Below the pieces are notes generated by a model. The model was not told the origin of the DNA and searched no databases. It saw only the letters and a list, made by a program, of their open reading frames with translations. 64,000 nt of DNA from Paraphysomonas bandaiensis (taxonomy: Eukaryota > Protista > Chrysophyceae): contig CBFFRP010000367.1 in the NCBI GenBank assembly GCA_965644295.1, forward strand, positions 1 through 64,000, in the 5' to 3' direction. This document shows positions 1 to 34,100 of this stretch, one piece after another. A program made the position numbers and the translations under genes. How positions within the stretch are numbered: position 1 is the stretch's first letter; the number at the start of each line of letters is the position of its first letter.

Positions 1-3000
1 CTATTCGCTAACTATTGCCCATTGGTCAAGGACAAAAAAAAAGGTTTTGCTAAATATTTTACAGTGTCTGAGACACCAGGTGCACCCCGATGCTTGAATA
101 AGACTGTTGGCAACTGTAGTTCGACCATACTGTGTGACATTGATATGACCCGAAAGAGCACAGACGAACCATTGTCTTTTCTTGTAGCCATCCAACGTGT
201 TGCCAAAGAACTCTCTCAGAATCTAGAGCATGCATGCATGAGTGGCGTAGAGGTTATGCAAGAGCTAAATAGAGTTCAGGGTAAAACGTTTCAGGCGGTA
301 GCCCCATTCATTTCACAACTCCGATTGGCGTCGAACAGGGAAATCAGCAAGTGTCGTCAAGAAATTGGATGTTCAAAGAGAGATTCTTCTCTGAAAGAGT
401 ACCTCATACGGCCTGCGTCAATGCAATTAAATCAGACCCCGCCGGTACAGCATGTGCTTCAATGGATATAGTAGAGGGAACTTTTCCAGATGAAGTAGTT
501 CATGGGATGCACAAGACGTACTCTGCGATGCTTGATTTGGTTTGCTCGGATGACCCCCAGGTGTGGAAGAACCCTGTGTCCCGGCAATCGCTCCCCTCAT
601 CGCCTGTGCCCGTTTCACCTCCCATGTCCTCTCAGCAAAGATCTCATGCACGAAGGGTTTATTCGTGTATGTAAGACTGCGACGAATTGTGATATTATGC
701 CTGCGGTTGTAAGGGGTACGATGAGTTGGGTGAGAGAGATGTCGTTATGTACTCTGATATGCAGCGATATGCCACGATAGTAGCTAGTGAATTGCTCAAT
801 AAAGTGCCTTCTTTGATTGAGTCAAGCGTGGTGGCAGTTTGATGGATAAGGGTTGGGAACGATTTAGCTGTACTGGGTGTGCATATGGCTCAATGTGTCT
901 ATCTTCCTATGGATAGTCGTTCGTGGCCGGGCATCGTGTTACTCAGGTTCTGGATCTTAGCAAGTGCGCAGCAGTTTTGACTCAGTCTCGTGTACTGTCG
1001 TCCTGTCAGTGGCTTAACGAAATTAGCATTCCAGTCATGGATGTGAACTCAGTAATAACTCGGCATGGGAAGCACCACACACCTGATGTAGATTCAGTTC
1101 TGTGTCGTAGAAAACAGTAGATCCAACTGACCTTGCGTATCTAATTTACCTCCGGTTCTACGGGTGTACCGAAGGGTGTGCTGCTACCACCAGGGAGCTG
1201 TGAATACTATTGCGGATTTGAATGAGCGATTTTCGGTGACATCGTCAGATAGGGTGTTTGGCTTGTCGTATTAAGTTTCGATTTGTCGGTGTATGATATA
1301 TTCGGCTTGCTCTCCGCCGGCGGCACAGGTCGTGCTTCCCTTCGTCTAATTGTATACACCCCAGATCTGAAGAATGGATAGGGATTCTGACAGCAGAGAT
1401 GATTACAATATGGGACACTGTTCCAGCTTTCATGGAGTTGATGGTGACACACTGTGAGTATTCCAAATACTCAGCTCCCTGCTAGCTTGCGCCTGGTATA
1501 TATGAGTGGAGACTGGATTCCGTTGTCTCGCCCAAATCGTATACGTGCCGTGTCTGCATGTCCCGATATTCACCGCATCATTAGTATGGGCGGGGCGACA
1601 GAAGCGGCAATATGGTCAGATATGTTTGAGCTGAGTAAGGGATCTGGAATACCACCGGGGTGGTCAGCATACCGTATGGTCGACCACTCCGCAACCAAAC
1701 AATGTATGTTCTCAATGAGGAACTGGACAACTGTGAATCATGGGTGACTGGTGGTATCTATATTGGTGGGGCAGGTGTAGCAAAAGGATATTATAATAAC
1801 CCCGAGAGGACTCGATACCAGTTCATTGTGCACCCGCGAACTGGTGAGTCGCTGTTTCGCACTGGCGATTTGGGCCGTGTGCGTCCCTGTGGAAATATAG
1901 AGATATTGGGGCGTGAGGATTCACAGGTCAAGGTAAATGGGTTCCGCATAGAGCTAGGTGAGATCGAGCGTGTGCTGATGAAGGACAAGCGAGTATCATC
2001 GGCTGCGTTGACAGTGCATCATAATGCCCTGTGTGCGTATCTCGTATTGAGTGACATGAATGGATCTGTAGATATAGAGGGTAGCAGCGATTATAGTGAT
2101 GCTAGTCATGATGAGGTGTTTCAGAATTTGCGAGAGTTATGTCAAGATACACTTACTGACTATATGATTCCACGCCATTTTGTTGTATTAGATGAGATAC
2201 CACTCAGTGCCAACGGAAAGGTAGAACGAAGTCGACTTCCTCTTCCAGATGCAGTGTCCTCAGCATTTTTATCATCATCCATCCTTGATTCTAAAAAAGT
2301 TGATCCTTCGTCGAGATTAGAGGCTGCCATTGTGGAATCGTTTGCTGCTGTGTTGCAAATGGAAGAATCTCAAATATGCTGCCAAAGTGACTCGTTTTTC
2401 GCCCTAGGGGGAAATTCTGTTTCGGCAATTCAGTTGTTATTCCGGATACGGAGTGATAGTGGAGAGTCTATTAGTGTTCAGGAGCTATTCGCTGCGCCCA
2501 CTGTATGTGGTATTGCAGCAACCATCTCTGCTAGAAGCGCGAAGACATCTCAAAATGGCGCGCAGGTCATAGAAAGTGATGGTTACGAGATCATTTGCCT
2601 GCAGGCAGGGTCTTCTGACGAAGTTCCTCTTCTTCTCTTTAATCCTGCAGGCGCAACTGGACTCTGGTAAGTTTGATAGTGGAAAATACCATATTGCTCT
2701 AAAGTGTATTCACAGTTACTCTGACTTGTCCGAGCATCTAGATGGGAAGTATCCCGTCTACTGTCTCGATGACGGGGCGATTCTGAAGAATGTTGAGCGT
2801 AATGAATCCAGTATTGATGCAGTGGCCGAAAAATGCCTACCTCTCGTTGTCAAATTTGCAAGTGCATACGGGTGTGTTTTATCAGGTAGAAATTCGCCCG
2901 ATAGTGCAGTGAAAAAGGTAGTTCTAGGCGGATGGTCGTATGGTGGGGTCGTGGCTACAGTTGTGGCTGAAAAACTCTCCAGCACACCCACTCTCACGCG

Positions 3001-3463
3001 TTACAATGTGGACGACGCGTGTTCTTTGGAAATAGCGGGGATAGTACTTTTTGATGCTCCTCTACGGAATGGTTCTTCAAATCTGAATGATATGCAAAGT
3101 GCAGACGAAAATGCTACTGCTGATGATGTGAGGTCTTGGATAAACCAATTCCATGGGCAAAGTGAGGAACTTTCTACTGAGAAAACGGTTGCCTCACATT
3201 TTTCCTACTGCACATCACTCTTGCGAAGGTTTTATGAACGCCAAAAGCGTGAGCGTCCCCTGTTATCGTGTCCTGTGCTTGATATTAGAGCTTCGCAATC
3301 GACATATAACTGTAGTGTTGAAGATGTGGAGGAAGTTTCATCCGGCGTTATCAGCACACACAAAACTGCAGGCAGTCACTTTACCATGTTATTTGGAAAA
3401 AACACTGCAGGGGTTGCTAAACTGGTTAAAAATTCAATCGATTCGTGGAGAAATGTATTATAA
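1..3463 (+). CDS. Non-ribosomal peptide synthetase, terminal module Cy(heterocyclization)-A-PCP-TE. 5' end lies outside the window; the first ~1.66 kb carries several frameshifts (sequence errors or pseudogenisation)
   Basis: Cy C-terminal motifs (VGNCSSTILCDID, SGVEVMQELNR, QTP, EGTFPDEVVHGMHKTY) at 1-560. A-domain motifs: LAYLI.(T)SGSTGVPKG (~1132-1180), SFDLSVYDIFG, LVYMSGDWIP, ISMGGATEAAIWS, IPYGRPLRNQ, FRTGDLG, ILGREDSQVKVNGFRIELGEIE, PLSANGK. PCP motif DSFFALGGNS (~2390-2420). GT-AG intron 2667-2715 joins GATGL-C-YSDL into a TE with GWSYG, VLFDAP and GSHFTML. Confidence 0.9.
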
Positions 3464-3949
3464 TCGATGGAACGCTCGTATCAGAGGTATTTTTTTCGTG
3501 TTGACAAATTTCTCCATCATATGACACCTCTAATAGAGCATTCTACAATCAATATGTGTTTTGACTTTTCGGCGTCTTGTTGCTTTTGCACTCAGCATGG
3601 AATATCATGTGGTTTCACACATTATCATTCCATCGTGCTTTGTGTTAAACACAACGAATACGTTTTCTATCAGTAATAAATATATATATCATTAACGATA
3701 GATACTGGCTTGTTATTTCTAGCTGATACCTTTCGATTTGTACTATATATTGGTTGGATTTATTTCGAGTAAGATTTAAGTGTATTTGAGAAGTACGATA
3801 TGAATAGAAAATTAGTACAATTGTCTACAAGAATACTGTATATAATATATTCCTTCCACTCATAGAAATATATGTATGACGCCAAAAAAATTAATTAGAT
3901 TATATGATACAATAGTATGTATCGTAATATTTGTTGTATACTTCAACTG

Positions 3950-5462
3950 TCACATAACAGTACATCCATCCTCTCGACGTTGTGCTCTTTCTAGCAACGG
4001 AACAATATCTCTGGCGTGTAAGTAATTCGAGCTGTCGGCAAATTTTTTGTGAAGATCGACATAGAACTTGCTGCGAGGGTTGTTGTAAAAGTATATATCA
4101 TACTCCTTCGTGGTATGGATTCTACCCAGTAATTCATCAAGTGTGTACTTGGAGAACGGAAGGTCTTCATACATGGCATTGATATCGTCTGGGTTAAGAG
4201 ATGCAACAAGATGACTAACAAGCCAAAAACCCCTCGTGTAAGGAAAAGCTGGACCTTCGAATCTTTACAAGATACAATAAGTTCAAATATATATGGGCCT
4301 GAAGCAGACTACCTTAAGACGCGCTCCTTCTCTTCTTCATAGGACGCAATTTCATTAGTAAAACTTAGGGGATCAACTCCGCGCATCTACAAAAAGAAAC
4401 TCATAAATTGCAATATACCCCTACGACTAGTTCACCTTTAGTACGACATCTCCTTCGTCCTCTTCCAGAAGCGCTTTACGGCCTACATCTCTCATCCAAT
4501 CGCAACCCGAACTTTGTGCCCCAACACACGATATGAAGGTCAGCGGTGTGTGGGAGCTGTCACTACGCTCCCAAACAAAAGATCGTAGTTTCTCTAGAGA
4601 GGCATCAGTTGGAAGTGTTGCAGCTAGAACATAGTGGGCAGTTGGCTCATGCAGGTGTTGCGTGTGCCCTATACTTTCTTGTAGGGCAGTTAATACCGGG
4701 CAAGAAGTGCTGAGGCCCTCCTTCTCGCTCTACTGCTCTAAAAGCGGACGCTATAGTCGAATGAGCTTCTCTCATAAACTCACTTGGAGGGCGCCCTCGG
4801 GGGGAAAGGGTCGCCACTCGAGGACACCGCATAAATCGGATAGATATGCTCCGCACTGGTATAAAAGCCAGTAAGTCTACAAATATATGAAGCTTGTTCT
4901 GCGTCTCCCTCCAGCGGGACATGGGAGCTTCTTCATCAGATTCGGAGCCTGAACTATTGTCGCCGTGCTCTCTCTGATGACCAGTGGCAAGAGTATTCCT
5001 ATCGTAAGACATCACATTGGTACAAAGTGATACATGAAACTCTTACTCAACGTCATCGGTCATAGACGCATTGTCCCCAATGATAAAATTCAAGTGGTAG
5101 TTTCTTAGAGCGAGCAGCTTATCGAGCAGCCCTATGGGTATATTATACTGCTCAAAGTACTGGCATATCTCTTCAAATAGATGCATCCGCTCATGAGGGA
5201 CCCCTGAGACAAACTCCCTGCAGTACTCGGGTGATCTCATGGTCCGTCGAGCGGCTGTAACGCTCTCTGCAAGCCTGCATTCCATATTGATCCCTGTGTC
5301 CCTCTCTATCGCTATACTCGCATGCTCCGCCTCATCTATGCTAGATACTATAGCCAGACGATTCGACTCATCGTACTGGTAGTACTTCTCCAACAACATA
5401 CCAGATGTATGCTCTCGTCGCTCATGCAGAGCTCCGTCTTTAAATATATATCTCCTCGGCAT
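3950..5462 (-). CDS. Multi-exon von Willebrand factor A-like domain protein (degenerate MIDAS); exon boundaries uncertain
   Basis: ORFs 5043-5462, 4647-5015 and 3950-4174 on the same strand. LNFIIGDNASM followed by SRWRET...LHIFVDLLAF...ISIRFM resembles the DDSGSM...TRWxE vWA pattern. A GTAAG donor lies just after DDVE. Confidence 0.55.
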
Positions 5463-7105
5463 TATGAGTTCCTTGTGGCTCTATATATACATACATACAC
5501 AGTGCTGTGCTGTCGATGTACACTGTCTCAAAGTCATCTGCAGTTGAAATTGGCTTACCCTCCCGAAGTTGAAGACTCTTCATCATCATGATTTTCTCCA
5601 CGTTACAACCAATTATATGCTAGCTATCGTATTTGATTTGCTGAAGTGGGATGTATTTTGTTCTTCAACATTGAGACTGTAGGTAGGAAGTCGGAAGTCA
5701 TATGCTGCTGCTGGTGTTCCCTTGCGAACAGAATTTCATCCAATGATATTGATCTAAAAATATATATACTCTCTGGATTGGTCAATCCGAAATCTTGAAT
5801 GCTGCTGTATTTGGTGTATAGACGGTATTCTTATGTTGTGTGCACAACCACTACAATACAATACAGGAATCGATTAATATCCAATGATTTCCGAACTCTT
5901 GATGATGATTAGTCGAGTGTCATAATTTAGTTGTATGTTGTGGTATATGATGAAGAGATGCACGGAACGATGGGATGTGGCTACTCCTTCTGTGATGTAT
6001 GGATTTACTTACTGTGTGATTGTGAGGCACGCAACTGGATCATCATTCTTTTATCAGCTTGATCTCGCTCTGTGTTGGTTGTTGTCGCTTACACTTTCAT
6101 CTGTTCAGCGCTTTACATTCCAAGGAAGCTGGTTTATTACATAGGGGTATAACCACACAGAAGACACCAAAAGATCAAATCAAAAGACTCGATAAAGCTG
6201 TATTCCAGTATACAGAAACTACACTAAGTTATGATGACTTTGTGTTAGGTTTTTTGGTGTGTCTGAAGGCATTTAGTGCCACAGAAGCTTTAAATAACCC
6301 TCTGGTTTCGTATCAGTTATAATTTTTCAGTTCGGCAATGAGGTTTCAACCTGAGTTCCTCTACAGTAAATTTTCTAGGGTTAAAGGCCTCTTAAATTAT
6401 CGTTGACGATGGATGAAGATGTAACAATTATTGGTTCCGTCAATCATCCGAAGATCGATGACTTCCTCTGCTTTGAACTGAGATCCCGTATATAGGACCC
6501 TTTTCACTCGACATGCAACCTCATAGTAAGCCTTTGTTGCTTAACATTAGCATTGATTCAGTTGTCATGATGTGTGTGTAACGCTGGGTATATTGTGTGC
6601 ACCACATAACCATTACATTGAGCACTAGTTCCTGCTGTGATTGCTCTATATACAGCGGTTTACTTTTCTGACACCAAAGATATATATTATTACTACAGAC
6701 AACTACTCATGTTGTGGACGTTATATGTGCCAGTATTTTTCTGTATCATATATATACAGTTGTATGGTTCATACGTGATGCACAGAAACACTGCGCACAG
6801 TGCCGTGTCCTTTTCGGTATACTGATTTTTAGAATTTACAATGACGATCGTTATAATAACGTTATTGAATCTTCAACATATACTATTATTAATTCAGTTT
6901 GTGATATATTTCATTGAACACTATAATTCACATATACAATTGTATAATCGAGATTGCCATGATATTAGACTATTACCTATAAAGAATGTGAATGCAGTGG
7001 TTGACCGTCGATTGAGGTGGCATCGCATCCAGCCGCTATCACAGTATCCTGATAATGTTATGTTGGATCCAGAATATGTCAGTCCTTATTTGGCAATACA
7101 GGCAG

Positions 7106-9020
7106 TTAGATTAGGCAAATCAGAGAATCGTCAAAAGTATTGACAGCGAATGCAATTTCTGGTCGAGTACACACACCTAAGTGCATCAAAGAGCGAATGA
7201 GTTCATTGTAGGGGAAATTCTGAACATAGCTTTGATTTGAGTATGATAGATTGTTGAATTCATGTAGATCATAGTTAAATGAGAGCAACATAGGTGTGGA
7301 CATGGAATCGCAGTCAGACATGTTAAATTTATCCAGCAGTTTGATAACATATATTGCTCCTGGCTGAACGTCGTGGTATTTTTGTCGAAATCCTGATTGA
7401 TGGAAATGCCTAAGTAGTAGTCCAGGGGTCCGAGTTCCGTGATTTAGAACTTTTTTTTTGATAAGGCTTTTGAATTCTTGGATGTCGATATCTGACTCCG
7501 ACGCGATAATGTGGTCATCGACATACATGGCAATTAGCATAATTCTGCCGTCGATATGTTTTTTAAATATGCACGAGTCAGATACTAATCTAGTATACCC
7601 ATGTCTAACATGAAATTAGTACAACATTTATACCAGTTTAGACCGGCTTGTTTAGATCCGTAGATACTTTTTAATAATCTGAGTACCTTGATATCGGGGA
7701 TGTTCATATATGGAGGGGGATACATATGTAGATTTCTTCCTCAAGGTTGGCATTGATGTAAGCGATGGTAAAATCGATCTCTGGTGGAGTTTGAGATTCA
7801 CAATAGTTGCAAGGGCGATGATGGTCCGTCGTGATGTCGCCTTCTTGGCTACAGGGATGTACGTTTCATTGTAATCGATGCCAGGTATTTGGGTGAATCC
7901 CTGAGCAACCAGTTGAGCTTTGAATTTTATATCATATATATCGCTTTCTTTTAATTTTAAAATTAAGCTTTCCTTTTATGGCTCACGCTCCCGATGGTAT
8001 CTCTAGTATCCTTTCTTTTGGAGAGTGGAAAAGTTTTATTGATCGCGTCAATGCAATTTTGAATCGAGAATTGATACGTTTGTGAGCAACTGCTCTATAT
8101 TCCGTGTATTCCTCGGTATATCGTTAGACGTCGTCTGCAGCGTGTATAGGTCGTCGAGTTGAATAATACTGCCGCTATTATCCTAGTCCACGGTACGCTG
8201 CAATTAGTCCTTTTTTCACTTTTATCTGTGTTATTACGCAGGTTAGGCCATCATCCGGGCCAATATGTAAGAGTCCTATGAGGTATTTGAAACTCTCAAT
8301 CGTCCTGGAGGTCTCGTTTTCTTTGAATATTTTCGTCAATTTCTGTAAATATTTTTTATCTGGTGATGGAATACATTCATTGAAGGAAACGTGTCCTGAT
8401 AATACAAAACCTCTTAGTACCGGGACAAAGGTTATGTTACCCGGTCCATCCTCACGATAACCCATAAAATAGCCGGATAAACGATGTCTGTCCCAATTGT
8501 TCCTTCGAAGGCTGGAATCAATATTTACAAAACATTTACATCCCCAATTCCTGCGTAGCTCAGATCGGGGATTTCATTTTCAACGAATTGTAACATAAAT
8601 CCCTTTGCAGTTGAGCATGACAATGTGTTTTTCAGATATATGTAGATGTGTTTCACAGCATCATGTTCCCAGAAATTGGCCGCAAGGCCAGAATCCATTA
8701 GACTGATGAGTGCTCGTTGTTTAATCGTTCTCCAGGTCGTTCCTGAAATGGATTATCGTCGGGGGTATAGGGAGAATTAACAGTCTACCTATAAGGAGGT
8801 AATCCAATGCTTTACTGGATATTAATTCTGGCTACAGTCGGCGTGATAATGTTTACCTTTACTCCGCAGGTATGTAATGATACTCCGGATAGAATCGATG
8901 ACAAAGTCTTCATCTCTCGTTTTTACGTAGAAATTCCATTTGACGGGAGGCTTTTCATTGCTTTTATATGGGACTTTCCGCTCACACAAACCAGGGAGAG
9001 AGGCAGCACTAATCTCCACC
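7106..9020 (-). mobile_element. Degenerate Ty1/copia LTR-retrotransposon pol remnant (integrase, then reverse transcriptase)
   Basis: RT motifs IAMYVDDHIIAS, PYNELIRSLMHLGVCTRPEIAFAV (7106-7540) and [21 protein letters not shown] (~7860-7925). Integrase-region motifs PYTP..NP, NFWEH and GYFMGY (8460-8770). Copia order INT-RT, with many stops and frameshifts; no LTRs recognised. Confidence 0.85.
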
Positions 9021-9661
9021 TTCGTAAGCTTGACACCGGTCTCAGTAGAGATTGTATTGCTTTCTGTGTAAACCCGATGGAAGCGTGTGCGAGTCTTTTG
9101 TATTCTAAGACTGCAGGTCGTCCTGAAGAAGTAGAAGCGAGATGAGATTCTTCAATGGAAGTCCTGAGATCTGATAATGGGATTTCATAAATCCTCCAAG
9201 TTGCTTACCCTTTGTGAGCAATATTCCGCCTTTTGATTATCTCCAGAAGTCTACTGATCCTTCGGGTGTTACAGGAGATCACAGTATATCTGATGCGTCA
9301 AGCAAGGCCCGTGCTAATGCTAAACACAAGATTTCTGCTGGTAAAAAGAGAATTCTCCGAAGTAAGAGAATGGCAAGAAAAAGGGTACACATGTAATGTT
9401 AATGCCTGTCGTGTATTAAATCATACGGCACATGATAAACAATAATGCATAAGTGAACTACATATGACTCTCCTCAACTGACGCAGATATATATTACGGC
9501 CTTATCGTCATCAGCTCAAGAAGCAATATGGCTACGCTCTTTATTATAAGAAATTGGATTCAACCTCCCATTATTTACACACACTAAATACAGTAACATT
9601 TATCGACACACTAAGGAATACTAACCGGCTATAAGTTGTTGGATACAATATCAATGCTGCC

Positions 9662-15413: not shown

Positions 15414-16698
15414 ATGTATGTATGTCTATGTATAGACGACAGGACTAACTATAGTCGTTAACTGGTTACTCAAATATGCAGTAGTCAGATATATATATAC
15501 GACTCCACTGACAGAGTTAGGCTACAGAGTGTGACCTCCAAGAAAACAGATGCGCGGGATAAGAATATGCGCGCTGTGTGTCCATCACACGGAGATTTGA
15601 TTGGACAGATACGTAAAATACTGCTTTTGATGGCGGATTTTTGTCACCAAAATCTCATTGAAATAATCAGGCGGCACTATGAAGCAGGTGGAGATCAGAT
15701 CGTGAACTGCTTTGTGCTGCACTCCAACGAGGCATATATATGGGCAGTCCTGTCTGAATTAAAGATACCCGTTAGTGTCCCTTATGTATTCGAATAGGAG
15801 GAAGTACAGGTTGGAATTCGTTGTGTGTTTTATTGAGTACGGCGAAGGCTAGCAATAGCATTAGATATGGTTAAGAGCAAGTGCCACGAAGGAAGCCTAA
15901 GAGGAGCTTAATGTGAGAAATTCAGCAGCGTAATAAGCTGAAAAGTTGTAAATATGTTTCGATAACTATAAAACTAAATATATTGAACTCTATTTATATT
16001 TCTTGGAACATTTTATGGTCTCGATGAGAAGATAATAACTATTGTTGTATTGTTGCAGAAGCGTCATATTTGTGCTATACTTAGTGTGTATATGTTTATT
16101 ATACTACATACATATTTTCCAAATATTGATATTTGTTCAAAGCTGCATCTGTGGGTGATATCGATGTGTGGTAATAACGTACAAAAACATGATTATGATA
16201 TGCAAGTTTCATGCAAGCCGAGTGTACAATGTGAACTTTTAGCCATACATACGGAAGCACAATGTAATTGTTCTTATGTCTATTTCTATGGCATCACAAA
16301 GGAGTAATGGGCAGCTTCTGTAGTCTCGTCTCGCCCAGCAAATTTCGACGACGAAGATTGACGCCAGACATCGTGTAGTCATAGAACTGTAATTTCTTCA
16401 CTGGTACACGTATCAACGTCTAACTATGGTATAAGTGTTGACTTTCGCCCTAATGATAATATAAAGTTCCAAATTACTGTTGCTAATACGATGCGCCATT
16501 GACTTCGAAAGCGTACATTTGAATCAAGCAATTAATTCAATAGATGCAAGACAGATAACTACTGAACGATTAAGCTACGTAAACCATATTATCTCGCATG
16601 CATGACAATATATTTACTGAAATCTAATTTGCCTCTATGAATCACATATATTTGTCGGGAATTCAAATAATATAGAGGCACATCCCTTTAACTCACGT

Positions 16699-25159: not shown

Positions 25160-28100
25160 CTAATTAGTGGTACAAAGCAGCGCAACACCACGAAGAATCC
25201 AGTGTAGAGGTCGTCGGTCCCTCGATGGAAGATGTGCGATGAATATAAGATATTTGTCAGTTCGCACTGGGTACTTGTATACTGGGCAGTCATATCCCCC
25301 ATACGGGCCATAGTCCCCTGTCATTGACTTCTTCGTCGCTTTGGTTACAGCAGAGACGAGCATTATTGGAAGTGCTGCAAATAGTTTCTTCGGCATACTC
25401 TCAGTGATAGAGTTTTCTTTACTGCTCCAAGCTGCCCCGTCCATATATAGTCCATTGACATATACTCCCTCCTGCATATCGAAATAAGTACAATGCAACT
25501 CCAACAATAAACAGATGTTACCTTCGGTGGAGCCCTGACTGCATCTGCACTATCTATATCTGTCACTTCCGCATGGAGCACAACTGAATCAAGAGCCCAA
25601 TTTTCATGTTTATGCGCCCTTGTGATTTCTTGCTGTACAGCAGTCATAAACCCTTGTGGGTTAAAGAACCCCGTGATCCAAAACGAATGAGGGCGTCCAC
25701 TTTTCAGCCAGCCGCGATATTGCTCGTCTCGCATCAACAAGCTTCCATACCAGATGCCCAGGTTCGGAGCTAGCCACGACAATTCGTCTCCCGCAGGGCT
25801 GTAAGAACTATATTATCAAGTGGAAAAAATAAGCAAGAAAAGTTACCTGTAGAGCCAAAGTTTAGGGACCCTCGCATCGAACACAGCATTGATTGAATCC
25901 ATGATTTCTGAAGTAACGACAACTTCTCCTTTGATTGCTTGCATCACAACAACAAGGGTATTACGGACTTTTTCAATGGCCATTTGAAGACGCTGCACCT
26001 CTTGAAACAAAAAGATATTGAGTGGTACCTCATATCCGCCCATACCCGCAATGGCCTCTTCGTATTGGTCCTCAATATAGTCAGCAGGAATTATACCCAT
26101 AAGCTCGTCACATTTCGCAAGTACCACTTCTTCACGAGTTTTCCCCCCACTTACAGCTCCAGATTGTTTGGGTTGCGTTTCGAGGATCGTATCAAGCAAC
26201 TGGTTAACTTCTTTGAAGCGGAATGTTAGGTCGGCATTGGGATGGAGGCCAAGCACTTCTGGAGGATCAGCCTCAGGGAACTTTTGAATATAACTAAAGT
26301 AATCGTCAATTTCCTGGTAATCCGATATTTTGTATGTGAAGTTATTCGGCATTCTGCTGAGAGGATTTTCCGGGTTGAAAGAAAAGTTTGGTGTCAAAGT
26401 CACTGGCGACAACCATGCTTCCGTGTATGCAACAAAGAGTCGTCTGTCCAAATCATCAGTAATTCTACCGCCGTACTGAACTTCGCCAACCATATACTGT
26501 AAGGTTGACCATGATAATGTCGTGTGCTCGAGGTGTTTCTCCAAGAAGGTTATAGTGGCATTAAGATCCCCGTCATTGAATTCATAAGGAACGCACCAAC
26601 CTAATGGACCGAACTTTCGTCTCTCTTGCACAACACTATGCGTAAAGCACAAGGCGAAAAGCAAAACGCGCCAGGTAGGTGTCTCAATTCTGTCGATGCG
26701 ATCCTGATCGATTATAACAGTGTAAGAGCGCTGTAGGCCAGCTTTCAGACCCTTTGGTGGTTCATTGGTGACTTTAGTTGACATTTGAAGCAGACCAATT
26801 GGAAACTGAGGATGTGGGTCAGTGGTGAGAAATAAACGGAAGTCTACACTGCAACCACTATCTGGCGATTTTAATTTGACCAAAAGATCTTCAAGAGTAA
26901 CCATAAAATCCAACCCAAGGTGACAGTTTTGTAGCAGTACCCAAGAACCGACAGATGTTGCCTGAGTAATTGCCTTTTGCGCAACAACATCTTGACCCTC
27001 ACCCATACTTACACACTCAACACCTCGTCGCTTTCTCCTCGCTAATGTCTCAATAGAATCCGTAGGGTCCGCACCTGCGGAGAGAAGGAAAATAATAGGC
27101 GTGTAATAATCCATTTCTTTCAGTAAAGAGTCCGCGGTATCAGCCACAGGTTCCACATATCGCACACCCATGACCGGCTGTTTCGCGCCGTTTACTTCAA
27201 TGAAGTCTGCTTTTCTTATGAAATCATTGACAGCAAGAAGAGTGCGGTCCTCACGCAGACAGCGAACAACAAGAAGACGATTGAAATTCCCGATAATCTC
27301 TTCTTCGTTCGCAATCTGCGACTCCATACCAGGGAGTGGACTCTTCTCAGGCTCATTTTCATTGTACCAACCCGACCACGCATTTTCTGAGCGTTCTAAG
27401 TCTTCAGCCAGAGTACTGAACTGTGGCATCGTTATAGCAAGCTGGTGTACATTAAGCCAAGCTTCATTACTCGCCCACGATACTGTTTTCGAAGGAACTT
27501 GGTTTATATTTAACGCCCCCCCACCCCGCAAGAAAAGTGACACGCACTTAGGATCCAACTTGCCCGCTGTGAGGAGAAGTTTGAATAAAATTATGAGCTT
27601 GAAACTAGTTTTATCCCGTTCATAAAGACCGCGATTGATGTAACGATACACAACATAAGTCATCGACTCAATTATGTTTGTGACGCGCTTACTTGGAAGG
27701 GATGCTTTCTCGGCGATATCCATAGATTTATCAAACTGCATTTGAAATTGATCCAAACTTGTCTGATACATACAGTTCACATTCGACATGTCAACAATAG
27801 AAAAATAAAGAACACTCCCACGGGTGGCTACTGGACGGTACTGCTCACGCTTTTCGTTTATGTTTTTTCGCATATCGGCGGCAGCGTTGAGTTTTTCCTT
27901 TACATCTGTTGCTTTTGACTTTGTATCAGCTAAAACGACAATAAGTTCTTCATCGTCCAAAAGATTTCCAGTGTTTTCAGATAACCTTTCCAATAAAAGC
28001 TGATCTAGTTGAATTAATGCCTTCGTATTCCCAGTGACATCTTCTAAAACATTCTTCAGCATCTCCTCGAGAGAGCGCTGCTCTTTTTGGATGACCCTTC

Positions 28101-31100
28101 CAAGAAGCTGCTCCTCAAGCCCTTTCTGTGTAACAGTGAAATCTACAATTGTACACTTCGATTGATCTTCAGGGCTGAAATGGGGGTTTGCTAAGCGAGT
28201 ACACATGTACAGCATGAAATCATCCACGAAGTCACACATTTTTCCAGATATGGAAATATATTTTGCCTTCGCTTTCACAACAACTTGCTTCTCGAGAACA
28301 GACGTAATCATAGGATCCAACTCTTCTTCGACACCTGTGACAATACAAGCTTTTCCTTCTGCCATACAATATTCCAGATGCTCACGAAATCGAGGTTGAT
28401 TAAACGATGTAGTACCAAATGAAGGCATGCGTTGCTCTTCATGATTACATATCCAGTTAATTGCTTGGCCTTGAGGATCAATAAGTAATGGGTATCGTGA
28501 ACTCCTTGTTACTAATATACCGTTCTGAACGGATAAAGGGTCAGTGGGTAGGCCTTCCAAATTCCAGTCCCCAATAGTTCCTATGTCTACCAAAAAGCTG
28601 GTCAAATCTAAGGAGTGAGACATAGGAATCTGTCGGTCACGAAGATCAGCGAAAAGCCGAACTCCAACAAGGTAATCCCTAAAATCTTGGTTGAATGGGC
28701 CACAGTATGCAACAAAAGCACAAGCTCTGGCAACATCTCCAACCAACCGAGTTTTGATATTCGCAAACTCTTCGCTGTCATTATTCCAACGCTCTCGTTC
28801 TCCAGCTAATCCGCTAATAAGCGCTGTTGCCTGCTCCATTCTCTTCTTAGTGTTGGCAGCATTCTCTTCAATAGCTCTCTTCGTCGCAATTTGCTTGTCA
28901 AAGTCCGCTTGAAGCCCAGCAAGTACATCTTGACACGCTCGCAGCCTCATTTCAGCACGTCCCAAATCCCTTTCTGCATCTCTCAAACGAGCCTCCGCCA
29001 CACGGAGTGCTTCCAGCTTTGGTTTAACGATTTTAGAAGCTTCGTGATAGTCTGCCATCGCACGACACCAAGTGCACAATCCTTCTGCTGCGCGTGAGGC
29101 GTTTCGTGCAACTACTGCATTAAATTCATCCAGCTCCAAATACGGGGCCATCAGCTCAACAGTTTCATCATTGATGAAATCCTTTTCAAACTTCGAAAAA
29201 TGGAAAATACTCTGCAAAAATCTGGCGTCCGAAAGCATTCCCCCCATGGCGATCTTGTAGCTATCTTTCACAAAATTGAATGTACGTTTATCTTTGCCGA
29301 TCCCTAAGCTCACTTCTGCCATTTCAACTCGACCAAGCTTTTCCATTTTTAATACAGACACGCAATCAAAAATTAGCTTAATGATATCACTAGGCTTTCC
29401 CAACTTTTTGAGTTCGTTCAAATCATTTGGCTTAATGGACGTGGCCGCCCGTTCAGCTTCATCTAAGAACGGCTGAGCTTTAGCTAAATCTTCCTCACAC
29501 TCTCCTTTCTCACCAGAAATTCTCTCTGCATCTGCTTCACACGCCTCTTTTACTTTAGCCACGGCATCAGCTTCTTTTTTGGCTTCCATGGAGCTAACTT
29601 CCAACTTACTTAACATTTCATTGGTAGCTTCTTCGGCTACTTGGAGTTTAACCTCCTCTTCTGCCAGGACTATTTTCATTCGCTCCACATCTTTAGCACC
29701 AGATGCCAGCTTTTCAAGACCTATTTCAACTCTGCTTGCTTTGTTTACGATTTCCTGGCATTTAGTGGAGTACATACTCGAGTAGTCATTGAGAAAAGAA
29801 AGAAAAGATTTTGGAGTTTGGTACACATGCCGTCGCATCTTTTGAAAGTATTCTTCACAACTATCCATCACAATCTTGTGAGTGATTCCCATGTGAGTTA
29901 TAATTTCCTGCTTGACAGTATCCGTACAGTCTAAAGTCATTTCTTTTATATATCCTGTGCTTACGGCGACAAGAGCTTCAGCTGGCCATGCCAAGAACCA
30001 ATCGATTGTACATCCAGCTACAATTCCTGGGAACCTTCGTGCTCTCTCAGGAAACTTTGCGCTCACTGGAGACATGCACAGCGCCATGTGCAAATTACTT
30101 CGAACGCGGTCAATAAAAAACTTGACTAAGTTGTCCGGAGTGTCCTCAAAGTCAGGAATCTGCTTGATAGCAAGAGAGCGCAACTCAGCGGCCATCACAA
30201 TTAGTTCATCCTTAGGAAACAGATTTGGTACTTCTCCGGTCGTTAGAACTGAATTTATCACTTCAAGAAAGGACTCATCCTTAATTTCAGCTTCCGTGAA
30301 CAAAAATGTAGTCCTTTGTCCCTGTCCACCGCACGCCTTATACAGCATGCGTAAATCATCCAAAAGACTATTCATGTTGTATGACTTCGATATACTGATT
30401 TGAAATAACTCGTAATTGGAGCAATATGATGCCAGCTTAGTTAAGCTTTGCTTTCCACTTCCTCCAACACCAACGAAGAGAATACTCCCCTTTGGCATAC
30501 CCAAACAACGGGATATACGCATCAAGTGCTTCATCGCATCATCAAACAAAATCAAATTCATTTGTTTCGCCGGGTGCGCTTCGTTGTATCTGTGCAGAAA
30601 TGTTTGGACTCTCTCGCGCAACGACTCCAGGGGACCACCAAGTTCATACACGAGAGGGGCTTCAGCAACAAGAACGCCATCATCATCGTACTCATCATCA
30701 CGCAAGAAGTCCACAAAGTATTGAGGTTCAATCAAATCTTCATAAGTAAATTTCCCTTCATCTGATTCTGATGCAGTGGATAGATCAGCTGGAGGTCTAG
30801 TCTTCAATTGACTACTTCCCAGTCGCTTAGGTGGGCCTGACGACTTTGATCTAGACCTGGAGTCCGCCTGCGGCTTATCCATTGGGATATCAAGCAAATT
30901 CCTGGTACATTCATTTAGTTGATCCATGAAACGATTCTTATCCTGGATAGTTGTGAGCTTATCACAGAAAACTCTCTCGCACTCGTGCCTCCACAGCAGC
31001 AAAAATATCTTCGCATTTGGAACACTGGCACGAGGAGTTCGTAGTATGCCCTGGAACACACGACTGAGCTCTCGTAAATTGAAAAGGTAATGAAATTTGC

Positions 31101-34100
31101 TTGGCGAAGGAAGCATTTTCGCTCGCATCCATGTCCATAACTGAACAGATGTGTTCGGAAGGTGCTTTACAAAATGTGCAAAGTCATGCGGCACATTCAC
31201 AAATCTTCCCGCCAACATTTGACCATATATCTCATTGATCGCCTTGTGTGAAGGAAGATTCATGTTAAAAATAAAAAAGTGTCGCTTTAGTCGATTGGGA
31301 ATATCCTGTCGGCCACCACCAGGATGTCCCATTGCAGCAACATACATTAAATCTTCTATATGCTTCAAATCACCTCGTTTGTCTTTGTCCAAGAAACAGA
31401 ACCCTGAGGTTTCAACTAATTGTCGAACCAACTCAAGCGTTGGTTGATCTCCCCACATATTCTTTTCTGGCATACTCAAGTCGTCCATAAACACAGTCAT
31501 CGTCTTGCCACCAGGAGGGCCAAATGACTTTCCTCCACGCTTATCCAACTCTGATTCAAGGGTCTGCTGAAACATCGCAGGAGACGTCGCCGACGAAAAA
31601 CACACCTTTTTTACTTTAAAATCATCGCGCTCCCTTTGAATATCCGAGAAAAACATCAGTGCAGTTGATGTCTTCGCTGTTCCCCCACTACCAGTCATCA
31701 GTGAACTTCGCCCTTGCATATGCATTTGACGCAAAAGAAAACTCGCTCTCATTGTGTCAACAGTTGGTACCAACATGCTCGAAAAGTCCGGTTCTTCCAG
31801 CATTGTCGGATACGACCATACAGGAGCAGTCCACTTATCCCATTCCATCGAGTCCGGATTGACGCGGTAGTCAAAAAGATTTTCATCCTCACTCTGAAAA
31901 TTCGGTAATAAACTCCTATCTGACTCTGCCAAGGACATCAGATAATGACAGAATTTCGATCTATCTTCAACCTCCAGAAGACCACCAACGGACCAAGTAA
32001 CCGCATACAAAAAAAGTCGTTCAATTTCCTGGCGTAATTCCTCCGGACTAGTTGCAAGATCCGCGCCTGTTAAAAGGGCATCCAGTAAATCGCAACAGCC
32101 AGAAATAATGCCAACGCGCGATGCTTGCATCACTGGTTTACATACTTTCGTCATAAATTGAAATAGATGTCCATAGCTTTTAGGGCCCGAGCATGACCCC
32201 ACATATCTTAAGAAACATTCCTGGAATATTGGAGCCAAATTAGGGTTCTTATTTTTCAGCCATGATTGGAGCACCGGCTCCCAGTCAAGATCGCTGTCAG
32301 ACACAAATATGATACCAGCTCGAGACACTGTTGCAGGTGACGCATTTCGTAAGTCTTCCACTTCGAACATAAGCTTAACATTATCAGTCATCGGGATTCT
32401 GTCACCATTGGCTAGTGTCAAAATTTTATTGTCATCCAAAACAGTGTTCAAGTTCTCAATCCACAAAGCATCAACAGGGCCATCACAAATAATCCATTGA
32501 ATGTCTTTTCTGTTGCGATCATTGAACTTTGCCCACATTGTCGCAAAAATGCCATCTAACCATTCTCCAGATAATTTGTCAGTTTCGCCAAACATTTCTT
32601 CGGCCCTGATAGCCTTTGGATTCATACGCGAACGCTTGTGACTCACGCCAGTTGTAACAGAGAGTGAGTCCTGCAAGCATGATATAATTTTACTCTTGCC
32701 AGCACCGGCAGGGCCAACCATCATGATTCCATGTCGAACGAGAGTTGTCTCATACAGCTGAATAACCTTTATGCTCCACGAAGGGTGCAAAATCAAATTG
32801 GCACTTTCAACAGCATTTTGAAGGGCAACTTTCAGATCATTGTGTTGAACTCCAGTAGGAATGCCAAGTGCTGGAAAGAGGTCAGAAATTAGAGAAAGGA
32901 AAAGTGGAACGTCTTGTGCAACAAGTTTCGACAGATTCATATCTCTCAGGGTACTCATGAGAACTACTTCTTCTGGGTCTTTGGGTTTGTCACGCTTTGT
33001 TTGTCCAGCTGTACGTAGAACCGACAATATATTTCGCAAGCCAAAATCATAATGCTTCTGCTGCGACAGCTGTTGCTCACATAGATGATAAAGGACAGCA
33101 AATTTTCGGGCCAATTCAGAGAATCCTTGGTATCCGACGGAACACAACTTGACTTTTATAATGATTTCTTTGTCTGGGACCATCATTGCAACCCCTCTAA
33201 ATAATGCTTTTAGATTTTCCGGGAGCTCCTGCCTTCCCTGATATCCTGGGTTCATTGTGATAAAATACCCAACCTGATCATTGAGATAAATCTCTTGACT
33301 ATCGCCTGGAAAAGTAAAGCTATGTGAACCATTTCTTTTAGCGTTTGTAATTGCAAGAATCTGTTGGGCGACAACAGAAAGCACAGGTAACTCAATTCGA
33401 TTAAACTCATCAAAGCAGCCCCACAGGCCGGCTTGGCAGAGACCTTTAAAAATCCGAGCCATATCAGTGTATCGTTGTTGGTCTGTGCAGTTAGTTACAA
33501 CAACAAACACTCCAATTGCCCTCCCCAAGTCTTTGACTGTTTCCGTTTTGCCGGTACCTGCCGGACCTGCTGGGGCTCCACCAAGACACATGCCCATGGC
33601 TTGGGAAAGAGTTATGAAACATCTATCTGTCAGAGGAGTTATAACCAGCCTCTCTTTACACCCAAGATACTCGAACCCATATTTGTAGTCTACGTCACAT
33701 ATAGATATCACACACGCCCCATTTCCATGAATGTCAGAATTCTGGTTTTGCCATGAAAAGCGACATTGCTTCAGCCACTCAAAATCGTTGGCATCGCTTA
33801 GTTTTCTCTCTTTAAACATCTTTAGTAAGTCTGCAAATACATCTCTTTGATGAACCTGAATGGTAACCAGAGTTTCAACTTTGATTCGATTCATACGAGT
33901 GCCTAGATCTTCGAGGCACCAAGATGAGAGCTCTTGTAGAACAGACAATTGGACGCGGCTATTTTCCAACATGGCCGCTTTATTTTGCTTCGCCTTTGAC
34001 AATGCATCATGGCACTGCGCCGTCCAACTTAATTGTATTCCAAGTAATGCGAATTGCCCACATGTATCATTAACAAATGATCGTAGTTGCTTTGACATAC

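What the first reader, a model, noticed from the sequence alone, without database searches (positions are those of the whole stretch)
1..3463. Bacterial-type thiazoline-forming NRPS (Cy-A-PCP-TE) domesticated in a eukaryote, with a spliceosomal intron
Seen: Cy-domain remnants, an A domain with SGDWIP / SMGGATEAAIWS / IPYGRPL motifs, a GGNS carrier domain and a GWSYG thioesterase. A 49-nt GT-AG intron (2667-2715) is needed to fuse PCP to TE. Known: these A-domain motifs and Cy domains are typical of Cys-heterocyclizing modules such as yersiniabactin HMWP2 and pyochelin PchE/PchF. Terminal TE release is a mostly bacterial feature, since fungal NRPSs usually end in C or R domains. Inference: an HGT-derived siderophore or metallophore pathway in a protist. 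The intron and eukaryotic neighbours argue against bacterial contamination. My by-eye pocket reading (about D-L-Y-D-Y-S-M-I-W) deviates from the Cys consensus DLYNLSLIW, so the substrate may differ.
Basis: partly seen in the sequence, partly recalled or inferred. Interest (0 to 1): 0.78.

Follow-up and report, generated by a model that had tools for sequence, protein, structure and literature searches.

The report
Spliced protist PKS-NRPS, terminal module
The start of this window is the spliced, polyadenylated last module of a giant bacterial-type PKS-NRPS gene that a marine flagellate and its algal relatives inherited long ago, but its "ring-forming" domain has lost the residues needed to make thiazoline rings, so the siderophore reading is not supported.

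Summary
Observation confirmed. Window 1-3463 encodes half a Cy-type domain, an A domain, a PCP and a TE. RNA contigs from three runs splice out exactly 2667-2715 (GT..AG, 49 nt), and one ends in poly(A) at 3695.

Two corrections:
- The window starts at a contig end, and its first 1664 bases carry about 60 assembly errors. The frameshifts are artefacts.
- This is only the last module of a ~4,340-aa, three-exon hybrid gene, complete on sister contig C619: GNAT-ACP-KS-AT-ACP-C-(nested TE)-A-PCP-Cy*-A-PCP-TE.

Interpretation partly supported. The gene is eukaryotic and expressed, and its ancestry is bacterial. Its A domains form one clade inside the bacterial Cys-type radiation. Relatives occur in Ochromonadaceae, Ectocarpus and unnamed marine protists, four of which share the same intron.

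"Thiazoline-forming" and "siderophore" are not supported:
- The Cy-like domain has Val where 130/130 bacterial Cy domains have the catalytic Asp. The TPQ and helper Gln and the first Asp of DxxxxD are also gone.
- These changes are present in all nine clade members read.
- Loading is acetyl-type (CurA-like GNAT), not aryl.

This scan had already met the same gene on another contig (s1-443531).

The parts
1..580 (+). C-terminal ~40% of the Cy-derived condensation domain (Cy*) of module 2. It holds GNCSST (109-126, in place of GDFT), PFI(FTT) (304-312) and VPHTACVNA (399-425, in place of TPQVWLDHQ). The stretch is error-rich and changes frame several times.
   Evidence: The full domain on C619 hits only Cy domains in the PDB. 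Motif columns compared with 131 bacterial Cy domains. Positions. Window errors.
507..2048 (+). Internal repeat: the end of Cy*, the linker and the A-domain core. It is identical in protein to the same stretch of module 1 (C619:10053-11611).
   Evidence: second match in C619 and C250. (476 aa identical). (one 1550-nt unitig at twice the depth, 346 against 161-178, with branch points at 510 and 2048).
705..2220 (+). Adenylation domain A2: LAYLIY/TSGSTGVPKG 1132-1177, FDLSVYD 1277-1297, IWDTVPA 1408-1428, SGDWIP 1505-1522, GGATEAAIW 1589-1615, YGRPL 1675-1689, NGK 2212-2220. Specificity code DLYDYSMIWK.
   Evidence: Pfam PF00501 and PF13193. TIGR01733 at 352 bits. Code. Trees.
2326..2523 (+). Carrier domain PCP2, with the phosphopantetheine Ser in GGNS (Ser codon 2416-2418).
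   Evidence: PF00550, E=8.7e-10. Position. No run laid shows the 1-nt deletion that C619 carries here.
2667..2715 (+). Spliceosomal intron, 49 nt, GTAAGT...CACAG, phase 2 inside a Cys codon (TG|T). The spliced protein reads ...NPAGATGL-C-YSDLSEHL...
   Evidence: The joint 2665->2715 (cut +1) is seen in X8, X15 and X17 and is absent from DNA run X1. Sequence. The same codon and phase carry an intron in L018, L024 and L026.
2620..3463 (+). Terminal thioesterase, split by the intron. The first strand and NPAGATGL lie in exon 2. Exon 3 (2716-3460) holds the triad Ser in GWSYGG (2930-2947), Asp in LFDAP (3047-3061) and His in GSHFTML (3371-3391). Stop TAA at 3461-3463.
   Evidence: PF00975 at 28.6 bits, above the cut-off of 26.4. 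The triad columns are conserved in clade and bacterial TEs. Positions.
3464..3695 (+). 3' UTR and poly(A) addition site.
   Evidence: The X17 cDNA contig ends at 3695 and is followed by 21 A that are not in the genome (table 7).

Best explanation
Window 1-3695 is the 3' end of one nuclear gene of a marine heterotrophic stramenopile flagellate. Earlier notes of this scan call it Paraphysomonas; I did not verify that.

The gene, complete on sister contig C619, has three exons and encodes a hybrid PKS-NRPS of about 4,340 aa:
GNAT-like decarboxylase - ACP - KS - AT - ACP - C (HHxxxDG) - [Cy remnant with a nested TE-like domain] - A1 - PCP1 - Cy* - A2 - PCP2 - TE.

Inferred mechanism:
1. The CurA/GphF-type GNAT makes an acetyl starter from malonyl-ACP.
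2. KS-AT-ACP adds one malonyl unit. There is no KR, DH or ER, so the chain stays an unreduced beta-ketoacyl.
3. C1 joins it to amino acid 1 on PCP1.
4. Cy* joins that to amino acid 2 on PCP2. This last module is the part in the window.
5. The Ser-Asp-His TE releases the product.

A1 and A2 are identical, so the same Cys-like amino acid is used twice (code DLYDYSMIWK). Cy* descends from a bacterial heterocyclization domain, but in the whole eukaryotic clade it has lost the catalytic Asp and both Gln residues. It most likely only condenses, and the product is probably an acetoacetyl-dipeptide with free side chains, not a thiazoline.

The gene came from bacteria once, long ago. It has since gained introns and spread vertically (or between eukaryotes) among ochrophyte lineages.

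Shown: gene structure, splicing, poly(A), domain identities, residue replacements, monophyly.
Inferred: the chemistry of each step, the substrate, the lack of cyclization, intron 1.
For: Expression and eukaryotic setting:
- The intron joint in three RNA runs, a poly(A) tail, and a neighbour gene with three 48-50-nt introns.
- The stretch is held by 20 runs from 13 studies, including polyA metatranscriptomes.
- Eukaryotic neighbours on the same contig.

Gene structure:
- C619 carries a 3579-aa open frame plus flanking exons, with the Pfam order given above.
- All catalytic motifs are intact.
- The GNAT region matches 7uci, GphF and CurA at E=5e-32 to 2e-25.
- C1 matches ordinary C domains and has HHAIVDG.

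Cy*:
- It matches only Cy domains in the PDB.
- Dyad Asp: D in 130/130 bacterial domains, V in 7/7 eukaryotic ones. TPQ Gln: Q in 130/130 against H or G. Helper Gln: Q in 118/130 bacterial domains against A in 6/7 eukaryotic ones.
- The same holds in P0149 and P0158.
- The role of these residues is taken from PMC9547227.

A domains:
- Codes; A1 = A2.
- The eukaryotic clade is monophyletic (SH-aLRT 100) inside the bacterial Cys-type A domains.

Age and spread:
- Four organisms of 43-58% GC share the intron position.
- Named relatives: Ochromonadaceae sp. CCMP2298 and Ectocarpus fasciculatus.
Against: - No chemistry was measured. Loss of the dyad Asp is inferred from alignment, and another residue could substitute; the dyad Thr is kept in 5/7.
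- The strong conservation of Cy* (59-66% identity to orthologues) shows a function but not which one.
- The A code differs from every bacterial code seen here at positions 278 (N->D) and 299 (L/M->Y), so the substrate may not be Cys.
- Intron 1 (in KS) and the start codon are inferred from open frames only.
- The upstream region ends 0.7 kb beyond the gene on C619, so partner genes there cannot be excluded.
- The tree is a quick LG+G4 search with midpoint rooting, and the bacterial sister group is unresolved.
- Several clade members are unnamed metagenome contigs, judged eukaryotic only from introns and neighbours.
Confidence: 0.7

Rival explanations
1. One reading: a working Cys-heterocyclizing module that forms a thiazoline and belongs to a siderophore or metallophore pathway like yersiniabactin or pyochelin.
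For: - The Cy-family homology is unambiguous.
- The A domain lies in the Cys-type clade with 8 of 10 code residues of DLYNMSMIWK.
- The dyad Thr and the second Asp of DxxxxD are retained.
- The domain is conserved.
Against: - The catalytic Asp, the TPQ Gln, the helper Gln, the GDFT Asp and the first DxxxxD Asp are all replaced, in all nine clade members read. Of these, the catalytic Asp and the TPQ Gln show no exception in the 130 bacterial domains aligned at those columns.
- Mutating these residues severely impairs cyclodehydration (PMC9547227).
- Loading is acetyl via a GNAT, not salicylate or an aryl acid.
- No transporter, reductase or other siderophore genes lie in the 20 kb downstream.
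Confidence: 0.17
2. The copy in the window is a decaying pseudogene or relic of an old transfer. The frameshifts in 1-1664 are real, and the transcripts come from another locus.
For: The window sequence itself changes frame at least six times between 1 and 1664. Three contigs carry copies.
Against: - All the differences that read laying listed in 1-1664 are contradicted by the probable source DNA run and by all RNA contigs.
- They stop abruptly at 1664 and lie at a contig end.
- C619 matches the window 1-8655 at 99.3% and C250 matches it to about 9.1 kb. They are overlapping or allelic contigs of one locus.
- Depth is single-copy outside the internal repeat.
Confidence: 0.03
3. Cy* has a new catalytic role rather than plain condensation. 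It might carry out a different reaction on the thiol or on the beta-keto chain, or the TE might release by cyclization, for example Dieckmann or thiolactone formation.
For: - The replacements are not random decay. The same residues (S/N, N, V-N-A, H) are fixed across lineages that differ by 34-41% in this domain.
- A beta-ketoacyl-aminoacyl thioester is the classic tetramate precursor (general knowledge).
- The TE is too divergent to match any solved TE by sequence.
Against: There is no direct evidence. Conservation of substituted residues is equally expected for a structural role in a condensation-only domain.
Confidence: 0.1

Closest known systems
Bacterial Cy-A-PCP modules: HMWP2 (yersiniabactin), PchE/PchF (pyochelin), BmdB (bacillamide), EpoB (epothilone)
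   Same: - The best and only PDB matches of the Cy* domain, full length against BmdB-Cy2.
- The same A-domain subfamily, with SGDWIP and GGATEAxIW and a DLYNxSxIWK-type code.
- Sources name the bacterial hits yersiniabactin or pyochelin synthetase.
   Different: - Only 29-36% identity.
- The dyad Asp, the TPQ Gln, the helper Gln, GDFT and the first Asp of DxxxxD are replaced.
- The code has D278 and Y299.
- The gene is nuclear, spliced and polyadenylated.
CurA / GphF / SxtA-type GNAT-ACP loading modules, and PKS-to-Cy hand-over as in curacin or epothilone
   Same: The N-terminus matches the GNAT-like decarboxylases 7uci, 6mfc (GphF) and 2ree (CurA) at E=5e-32 to 2e-25. It is followed by ACP-KS-AT-ACP and then NRPS modules.
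   Different: - It lies in a eukaryote.
- The first NRPS module uses an ordinary C domain plus a decayed Cy half that carries a nested TE (also the scan's note s1-443531).
- There are no reductive or oxidase domains.
The PKS-NRPS hybrid noted in the Chrysochromulina parva assembly (N-acetyltransferase, KS, C, A predicted for Cys), PMC7073580
   Same: The domain order at the 5' end and the Cys prediction are the same. It is probably the same family.
   Different: That paper describes only a fragment on a small contig. It reports no Cy-type domain, no intron or expression evidence and no phylogeny. I did not compare the sequences.
burA-like PKS-NRPS hybrids of dinoflagellates, thought to be HGT-derived (PMC6722697)
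   Same: Bacterial-type hybrid megasynthases that are truly eukaryotic transcripts, with poly(A) and lineage-specific RNA processing.
   Different: The architecture and the bacterial source family differ, and no Cy-type domain is reported there.

Membership tests
NRPS heterocyclization (Cy) domain | Sequence homology to the Cy subfamily of the condensation superfamily over the whole domain | tested here: met
   All 8 PDB hits are NRPSs that contain Cy domains. BmdB-Cy2 aligns over query 18-476 against chain 8-424, E=1.3e-31.
NRPS heterocyclization (Cy) domain | DxxxxD signature in place of HHxxxDG | tested here: not met
   The motif reads SLFLMD. The first Asp is Ser or Asn in 7/7 clade members, against D in 120/131 bacterial domains. 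The second Asp is kept.
NRPS heterocyclization (Cy) domain | Asp-Thr cyclodehydration dyad with the TPQ and helper Gln (HMWP2 D1862, T1830, Q1858, Q1864; PMC9547227) | tested here: not met
   Thr is kept (FTT). Asp is replaced by Val (bacteria D 130/130). The TPQ Gln is replaced by His (bacteria Q 130/130). The helper Gln is replaced by Ala.
NRPS heterocyclization (Cy) domain | Makes a thiazoline or oxazoline ring | not testable with these tools
   This needs an enzyme assay or the product structure.
Cys-activating NRPS adenylation domain | ANL core motifs A3-A10 intact | tested here: met
   YTSGSTGVPKG, FDLSVYD, SGDWIP, GGATE, YGRPL, RTGDLG and NGK are present. TIGR01733 scores 352 bits against a cut-off of 317.
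Cys-activating NRPS adenylation domain | Specificity code DLYN(L/M)S(L/M)IWK | tested here: inconclusive
   The code is DLYDYSMIWK, which is 8 of 10 against DLYNMSMIWK. D278 is shared only with P0001-A1. Y/F/W at 299 is clade-wide.
Cys-activating NRPS adenylation domain | Falls in the Cys-type clade in a tree | tested here: met
   The eukaryotic clade lies inside the 44-row DLYN..IWK cluster, which is separated at SH-aLRT 100 from A domains with other codes (repeated).
Type I (chain-releasing) thioesterase, PF00975 | Alpha/beta-hydrolase TE profile match and a Ser-Asp-His triad | tested here: met
   PF00975 scores 28.6 bits, above 26.4. GWSYGG, LFDAP and GSHFTML align with the triad columns of clade and bacterial TEs. 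There is no PDB sequence hit, and the fold was not modelled.
Spliceosomal intron | GT..AG borders and removal from RNA but not from DNA | tested here: met
   The joint is seen in X8, X15 and X17 and is absent from X1 DNA. GTAAGT...CACAG.
Yersiniabactin/pyochelin-type siderophore assembly line | Aryl-acid (salicylate) starter and catalytically complete Cy domains | tested here: not met
   The starter module is a GNAT-ACP-KS-AT. Cy* lacks the dyad Asp. C1 is an ordinary C domain.
Yersiniabactin/pyochelin-type siderophore assembly line | Clustered tailoring or transport genes; iron-regulated expression | tested here: inconclusive
   None lie in the 20 kb downstream. Upstream is unknown because the contig ends. 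Regulation cannot be tested here.
Hybrid type I PKS-NRPS | KS, AT, carrier, C and A domains in one reading frame or transcript | tested here: met
   A 3579-aa open frame on C619 carries KS_C-AT-ACP-C-TE-A-PCP-C-A-PCP. RNA contigs carry the module-1 branch too (loose end at 2048 in X8). A single full-length transcript was not shown.

The most novel reading that the evidence does not exclude
Ochrophyte protists carry a eukaryote-specific subclass of Cy-derived domains. Its cyclodehydration site has been rebuilt (Ser/Asn, Asn, His, Val-Asn-Ala in place of Asp, Asp, Gln, Asp-His-Gln) and then conserved since before the split of chrysophyte-like lineages. It performs a reaction other than plain condensation or thiazoline formation on a Cys-like residue attached to a beta-ketoacyl chain. 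The product would be an undescribed thiol-bearing metabolite made by a common marine bacterivore and expressed widely in the ocean.
Probability: 0.2. Interest if true: 0.7.

Novelty: new variant of a known kind. Interest (0 to 1): 0.5.

Why it matters
Bacterial-type megasynthases in protists are known in outline, but very few are documented with splicing, poly(A), a complete architecture and a dated history.

What this case offers:
- The gene is expressed in open-ocean polyA metatranscriptomes.
- It is shared by chrysophyte-like flagellates and a brown alga.
- A conserved intron shows a long eukaryotic residence.
- It is a natural experiment on Cy domains: the catalytic Asp and both Gln residues are replaced, yet the domain stays conserved. 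That bears on how condensation and cyclodehydration are separated in this fold.
- It shows concerted evolution of the two A domains inside one gene.

Practical lesson: the frameshifts that make the window copy look odd are contig-end errors, and the internal repeat broke the assembly.

Tried and rejected
- Pfam on the raw window ORFs 1-777 found nothing, because of the frameshift errors. The domain only became readable on C619.
- The TE exon has no PDB sequence match at E<=0.1 and no NCBIfam match. Its class rests on Pfam and the triad alignment.
- No contig extends C619 upstream, so upstream partners are unknown.
- Literature searches for NRPS in Paraphysomonas or chrysophytes, and for Cy domains in protists, found no description. 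Only a passing note on a C. parva fragment turned up.
- I considered bacterial contamination or a chimeric join and rejected it. One DNA unitig links the TE to the spliced neighbour gene (X1 record 4, 2019-5628), and the RNA is spliced and polyadenylated.
- I considered the extra frame changes in 900-1660 as further introns and rejected that. One falls between LAYLIY and TSGSTG with no room for an intron, and the reads correct them.
- I considered C619 and C250 as paralogues and rejected that. They overlap the window for 8.6 kb and 9.1 kb at 97.7-99.3%.
- The 1-nt deletion of C619 in the GGNS codon is not seen in any run, so I treat it as an assembly error.
- Not done: I submitted no joined (spliced) protein to any tool.
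- Not used: the large representative-protein search, structure prediction and complex prediction. The open questions are chemical and these would not settle them.
- I did not verify the organism name.
Full report
WHERE THE WINDOW SITS. The window is G000:C367:1-64000 in a genome of 62.6 Mb and 669 contigs, so the finding lies at a contig start. Two short contigs hold the same locus. C619 (19.2 kb) matches window 1-8655 at 99.3%. C250 (25.3 kb) matches window 1-9111 at 97.7-98.9%. A three-way alignment shows 41 indel columns and 21 substitutions unique to the window, and all of them lie in 1-1664. After 1664 the three copies are nearly identical. Laying Logan contigs of the probable source DNA run (X1) and of three RNA runs on window 1-6000 contradicts the window at all the differences it listed there, its tables being truncated. 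The frame changes that break the A domain in the window are therefore contig-end assembly errors. They are not introns and not decay.

THE OBSERVATION. Pfam finds AMP-binding, AMP-binding_C, PP-binding and Thioesterase in window 1454-3460. The proposed intron is confirmed exactly. RNA contigs from X8, X15 (polyA metatranscriptome) and X17 (cDNA metatranscriptome) skip 49 nt with GT..AG borders, which places the intron at 2667-2715. The DNA run does not skip. The junction lies in phase 2 of a Cys codon and gives ...NPAGATGL-C-YSDLSEHL.... The X17 contig ends at 3695 followed by 21 untemplated A, so the mRNA is polyadenylated. I searched the exons separately by reference and sent no joined spliced sequence to any tool.

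THE WHOLE GENE. On C619 the minus strand carries three open frames: 604 aa, 3579 aa without a stop, and the 296-aa TE frame. Pfam gives the following order:
- [GNAT-like]-ACP-KS
- KS_C-AT-ACP-Condensation-Thioesterase-like-A-PCP-Condensation-A-PCP
- TE

Further points on the gene:
- The KS is split by a 56-nt GT..AG gap. I take this as intron 1, inferred from frames only.
- The N-terminus matches the GNAT-like decarboxylases of PKS loading modules: 7uci at E=5e-32, and GphF and CurA at about 2e-25.
- C1 is an ordinary C domain with HHAIVDG.
- All catalytic motifs of KS, AT, the carriers, both A domains, the nested TE and the terminal TE are intact.
- C619 has a 1-nt deletion in the GGNS codon of PCP2 that no run shows.
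- The estimated length is about 4,340 aa.
- The genome holds candidate PPTases.
- Condensation domains were found only at this locus, which is a lower bound.

THE CY DOMAIN. The domain before A2, whose last ~40% is window 1-580, matches only Cy domains among solved structures: BmdB, EpoB, HMWP2, PchE and FmoA3.

I then aligned it with 131 bacterial Cy domains and 6 relatives from the eukaryotic clade.
- The Asp of the Asp-Thr dyad is D in 130/130 bacterial rows and V in 7/7 eukaryotic rows.
- The TPQ Gln is Q in 130/130 against H or G.
- The helper Gln is A.
- GDFT reads GN(C/F/H)S.
- The first Asp of DxxxxD is S or N.
- Two more orthologues, P0149 and P0158, show the same residues.

According to PMC9547227, the DxxxxD aspartates are structural, while the Asp-Thr dyad and a nearby Gln are the residues whose mutation severely affects cyclodehydration. 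The domain is otherwise well conserved, at 59-66% identity to orthologues. The most economical reading is a Cy-derived domain that still condenses but no longer cyclizes. "Thiazoline-forming" is therefore not supported, though only an assay can exclude it.

THE A DOMAIN.
- Bacterial neighbours have DLYNLSLIWK, DLYNMSMIWK or DLYNMSLIWK. This is the classical Cys code, which I cite from general knowledge.
- Clade members have DLYN(Y/F/W/L)S(M/L)IWK.
- An aromatic residue at position 299 is thus common in the clade (all but P0072).
- D278 occurs only here and in one domain of P0001.
- The substrate is Cys-like but unresolved.

A1 and A2 are identical over 476 aa. Illumina unitigs collapse them into one 1550-nt piece at double depth. 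This internal repeat is the likely reason the assembly broke at window position 1.

ORIGIN. For the Cy*-A2 region, a small set of unnamed metagenome proteins has 43-58% identity. The next hits are bacterial, at 29-36%, and several are named yersiniabactin or pyochelin synthetase by their sources. With the PKS-C1 region as query, full-length matches include proteins of Ochromonadaceae sp. CCMP2298 and Ectocarpus fasciculatus. The latter has a single NRPS module.

In A-domain trees the 13 eukaryotic domains form one clade (SH-aLRT 100) on a long stem. The clade lies inside the bacterial Cys-type cluster, and its sister group is unresolved. Within each two-module protein the two A domains are each other's closest relatives, which points to concerted evolution.

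The PCP|TE intron lies at the same codon and phase in four organisms of 43-58% GC: the window, L018, L024 and L026. Their neighbours are eukaryotic, including WD40/Utp21, RPL13, EF-hand and Rad60-SLD. This fits one old transfer from bacteria followed by a long eukaryotic history. A recent transfer or contamination is excluded.

CONTEXT. Downstream in the window lie:
- a spliced gene with no family match;
- a copia-type RT fragment;
- ankyrin, xanthine/uracil permease, mitochondrial carrier and DUSP genes.

None of these suggests a siderophore cluster. Together with the acetyl-type loader, that leaves the metallophore idea without support.

LITERATURE. I found no description of this gene family in chrysophytes. 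A review of algal genome mining mentions a fragment in a Chrysochromulina parva assembly with N-acetyltransferase, KS, C and a Cys-predicted A domain (PMC7073580). That is probably the same family. HGT-derived PKS-NRPS hybrids in dinoflagellates are known (PMC6722697).

EARLIER NOTES OF THIS SCAN. The scan had already met this gene on another contig: note s1-443531 describes the nested TE in module 1. I saw the same Pfam hit and a weak Cy-like remnant there. Earlier notes name the organism Paraphysomonas (for example s1-439166), and I did not test that.

VERDICT. It is wrong or unsupported on thiazoline formation, on siderophore function and on the extent of the gene.

Noticed in passing
G000 contig C80, about 195-295 kb (outside the window): Giant multimodular type I PKS open frames of 12,609, 7,347 and 7,292 aa without stops, with at least 18 KS hits.
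   Followed up: no
window 507-2048 and C619:10053-11611: The A domains of modules 1 and 2 are identical over 476 aa. In all five two-module clade members the two A domains are sisters in the tree. This points to concerted evolution by intragenic conversion. The repeat probably broke the assembly here.
   Followed up: partly
window 1-1664; C619:~6250; C250:1-1600: Assembly quality. The window's first 1664 bases carry about 60 errors. C619 has a 1-nt deletion in the PCP2 GGNS codon that no run shows. The C250 contig end has a stop inside its C domain. C619 and C250 are redundant overlapping or allelic contigs.
   Followed up: yes
window 3894-5352 (minus strand): A neighbour gene seen in a polyA metatranscriptome contig, with three introns of 48-50 nt (4263-4312, 4387-4435, 4998-5045). 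Its exons match no Pfam family.
   Followed up: partly
window 25843-38310 (minus strand): A single ORF of 4,155 aa, not examined here.
   Followed up: no
C250:13105-13297 and 15565-15884, against window ~6837 and 63266-63586: C250 carries a ~190-bp insertion relative to the window. After window ~9111 it diverges into a copy of the short retroposon that is also present at window 63266-63586. This looks like an allelic insertion polymorphism.
   Followed up: no
P0220 (Ectocarpus fasciculatus) and P0209 (Ochromonadaceae sp. CCMP2298): Named relatives of the megasynthase. The brown-alga protein has only one NRPS module (KS-AT-ACP-C-A-PCP-TE) with code DLYNFSMIWK and the same GL-C-Y junction.
   Followed up: partly
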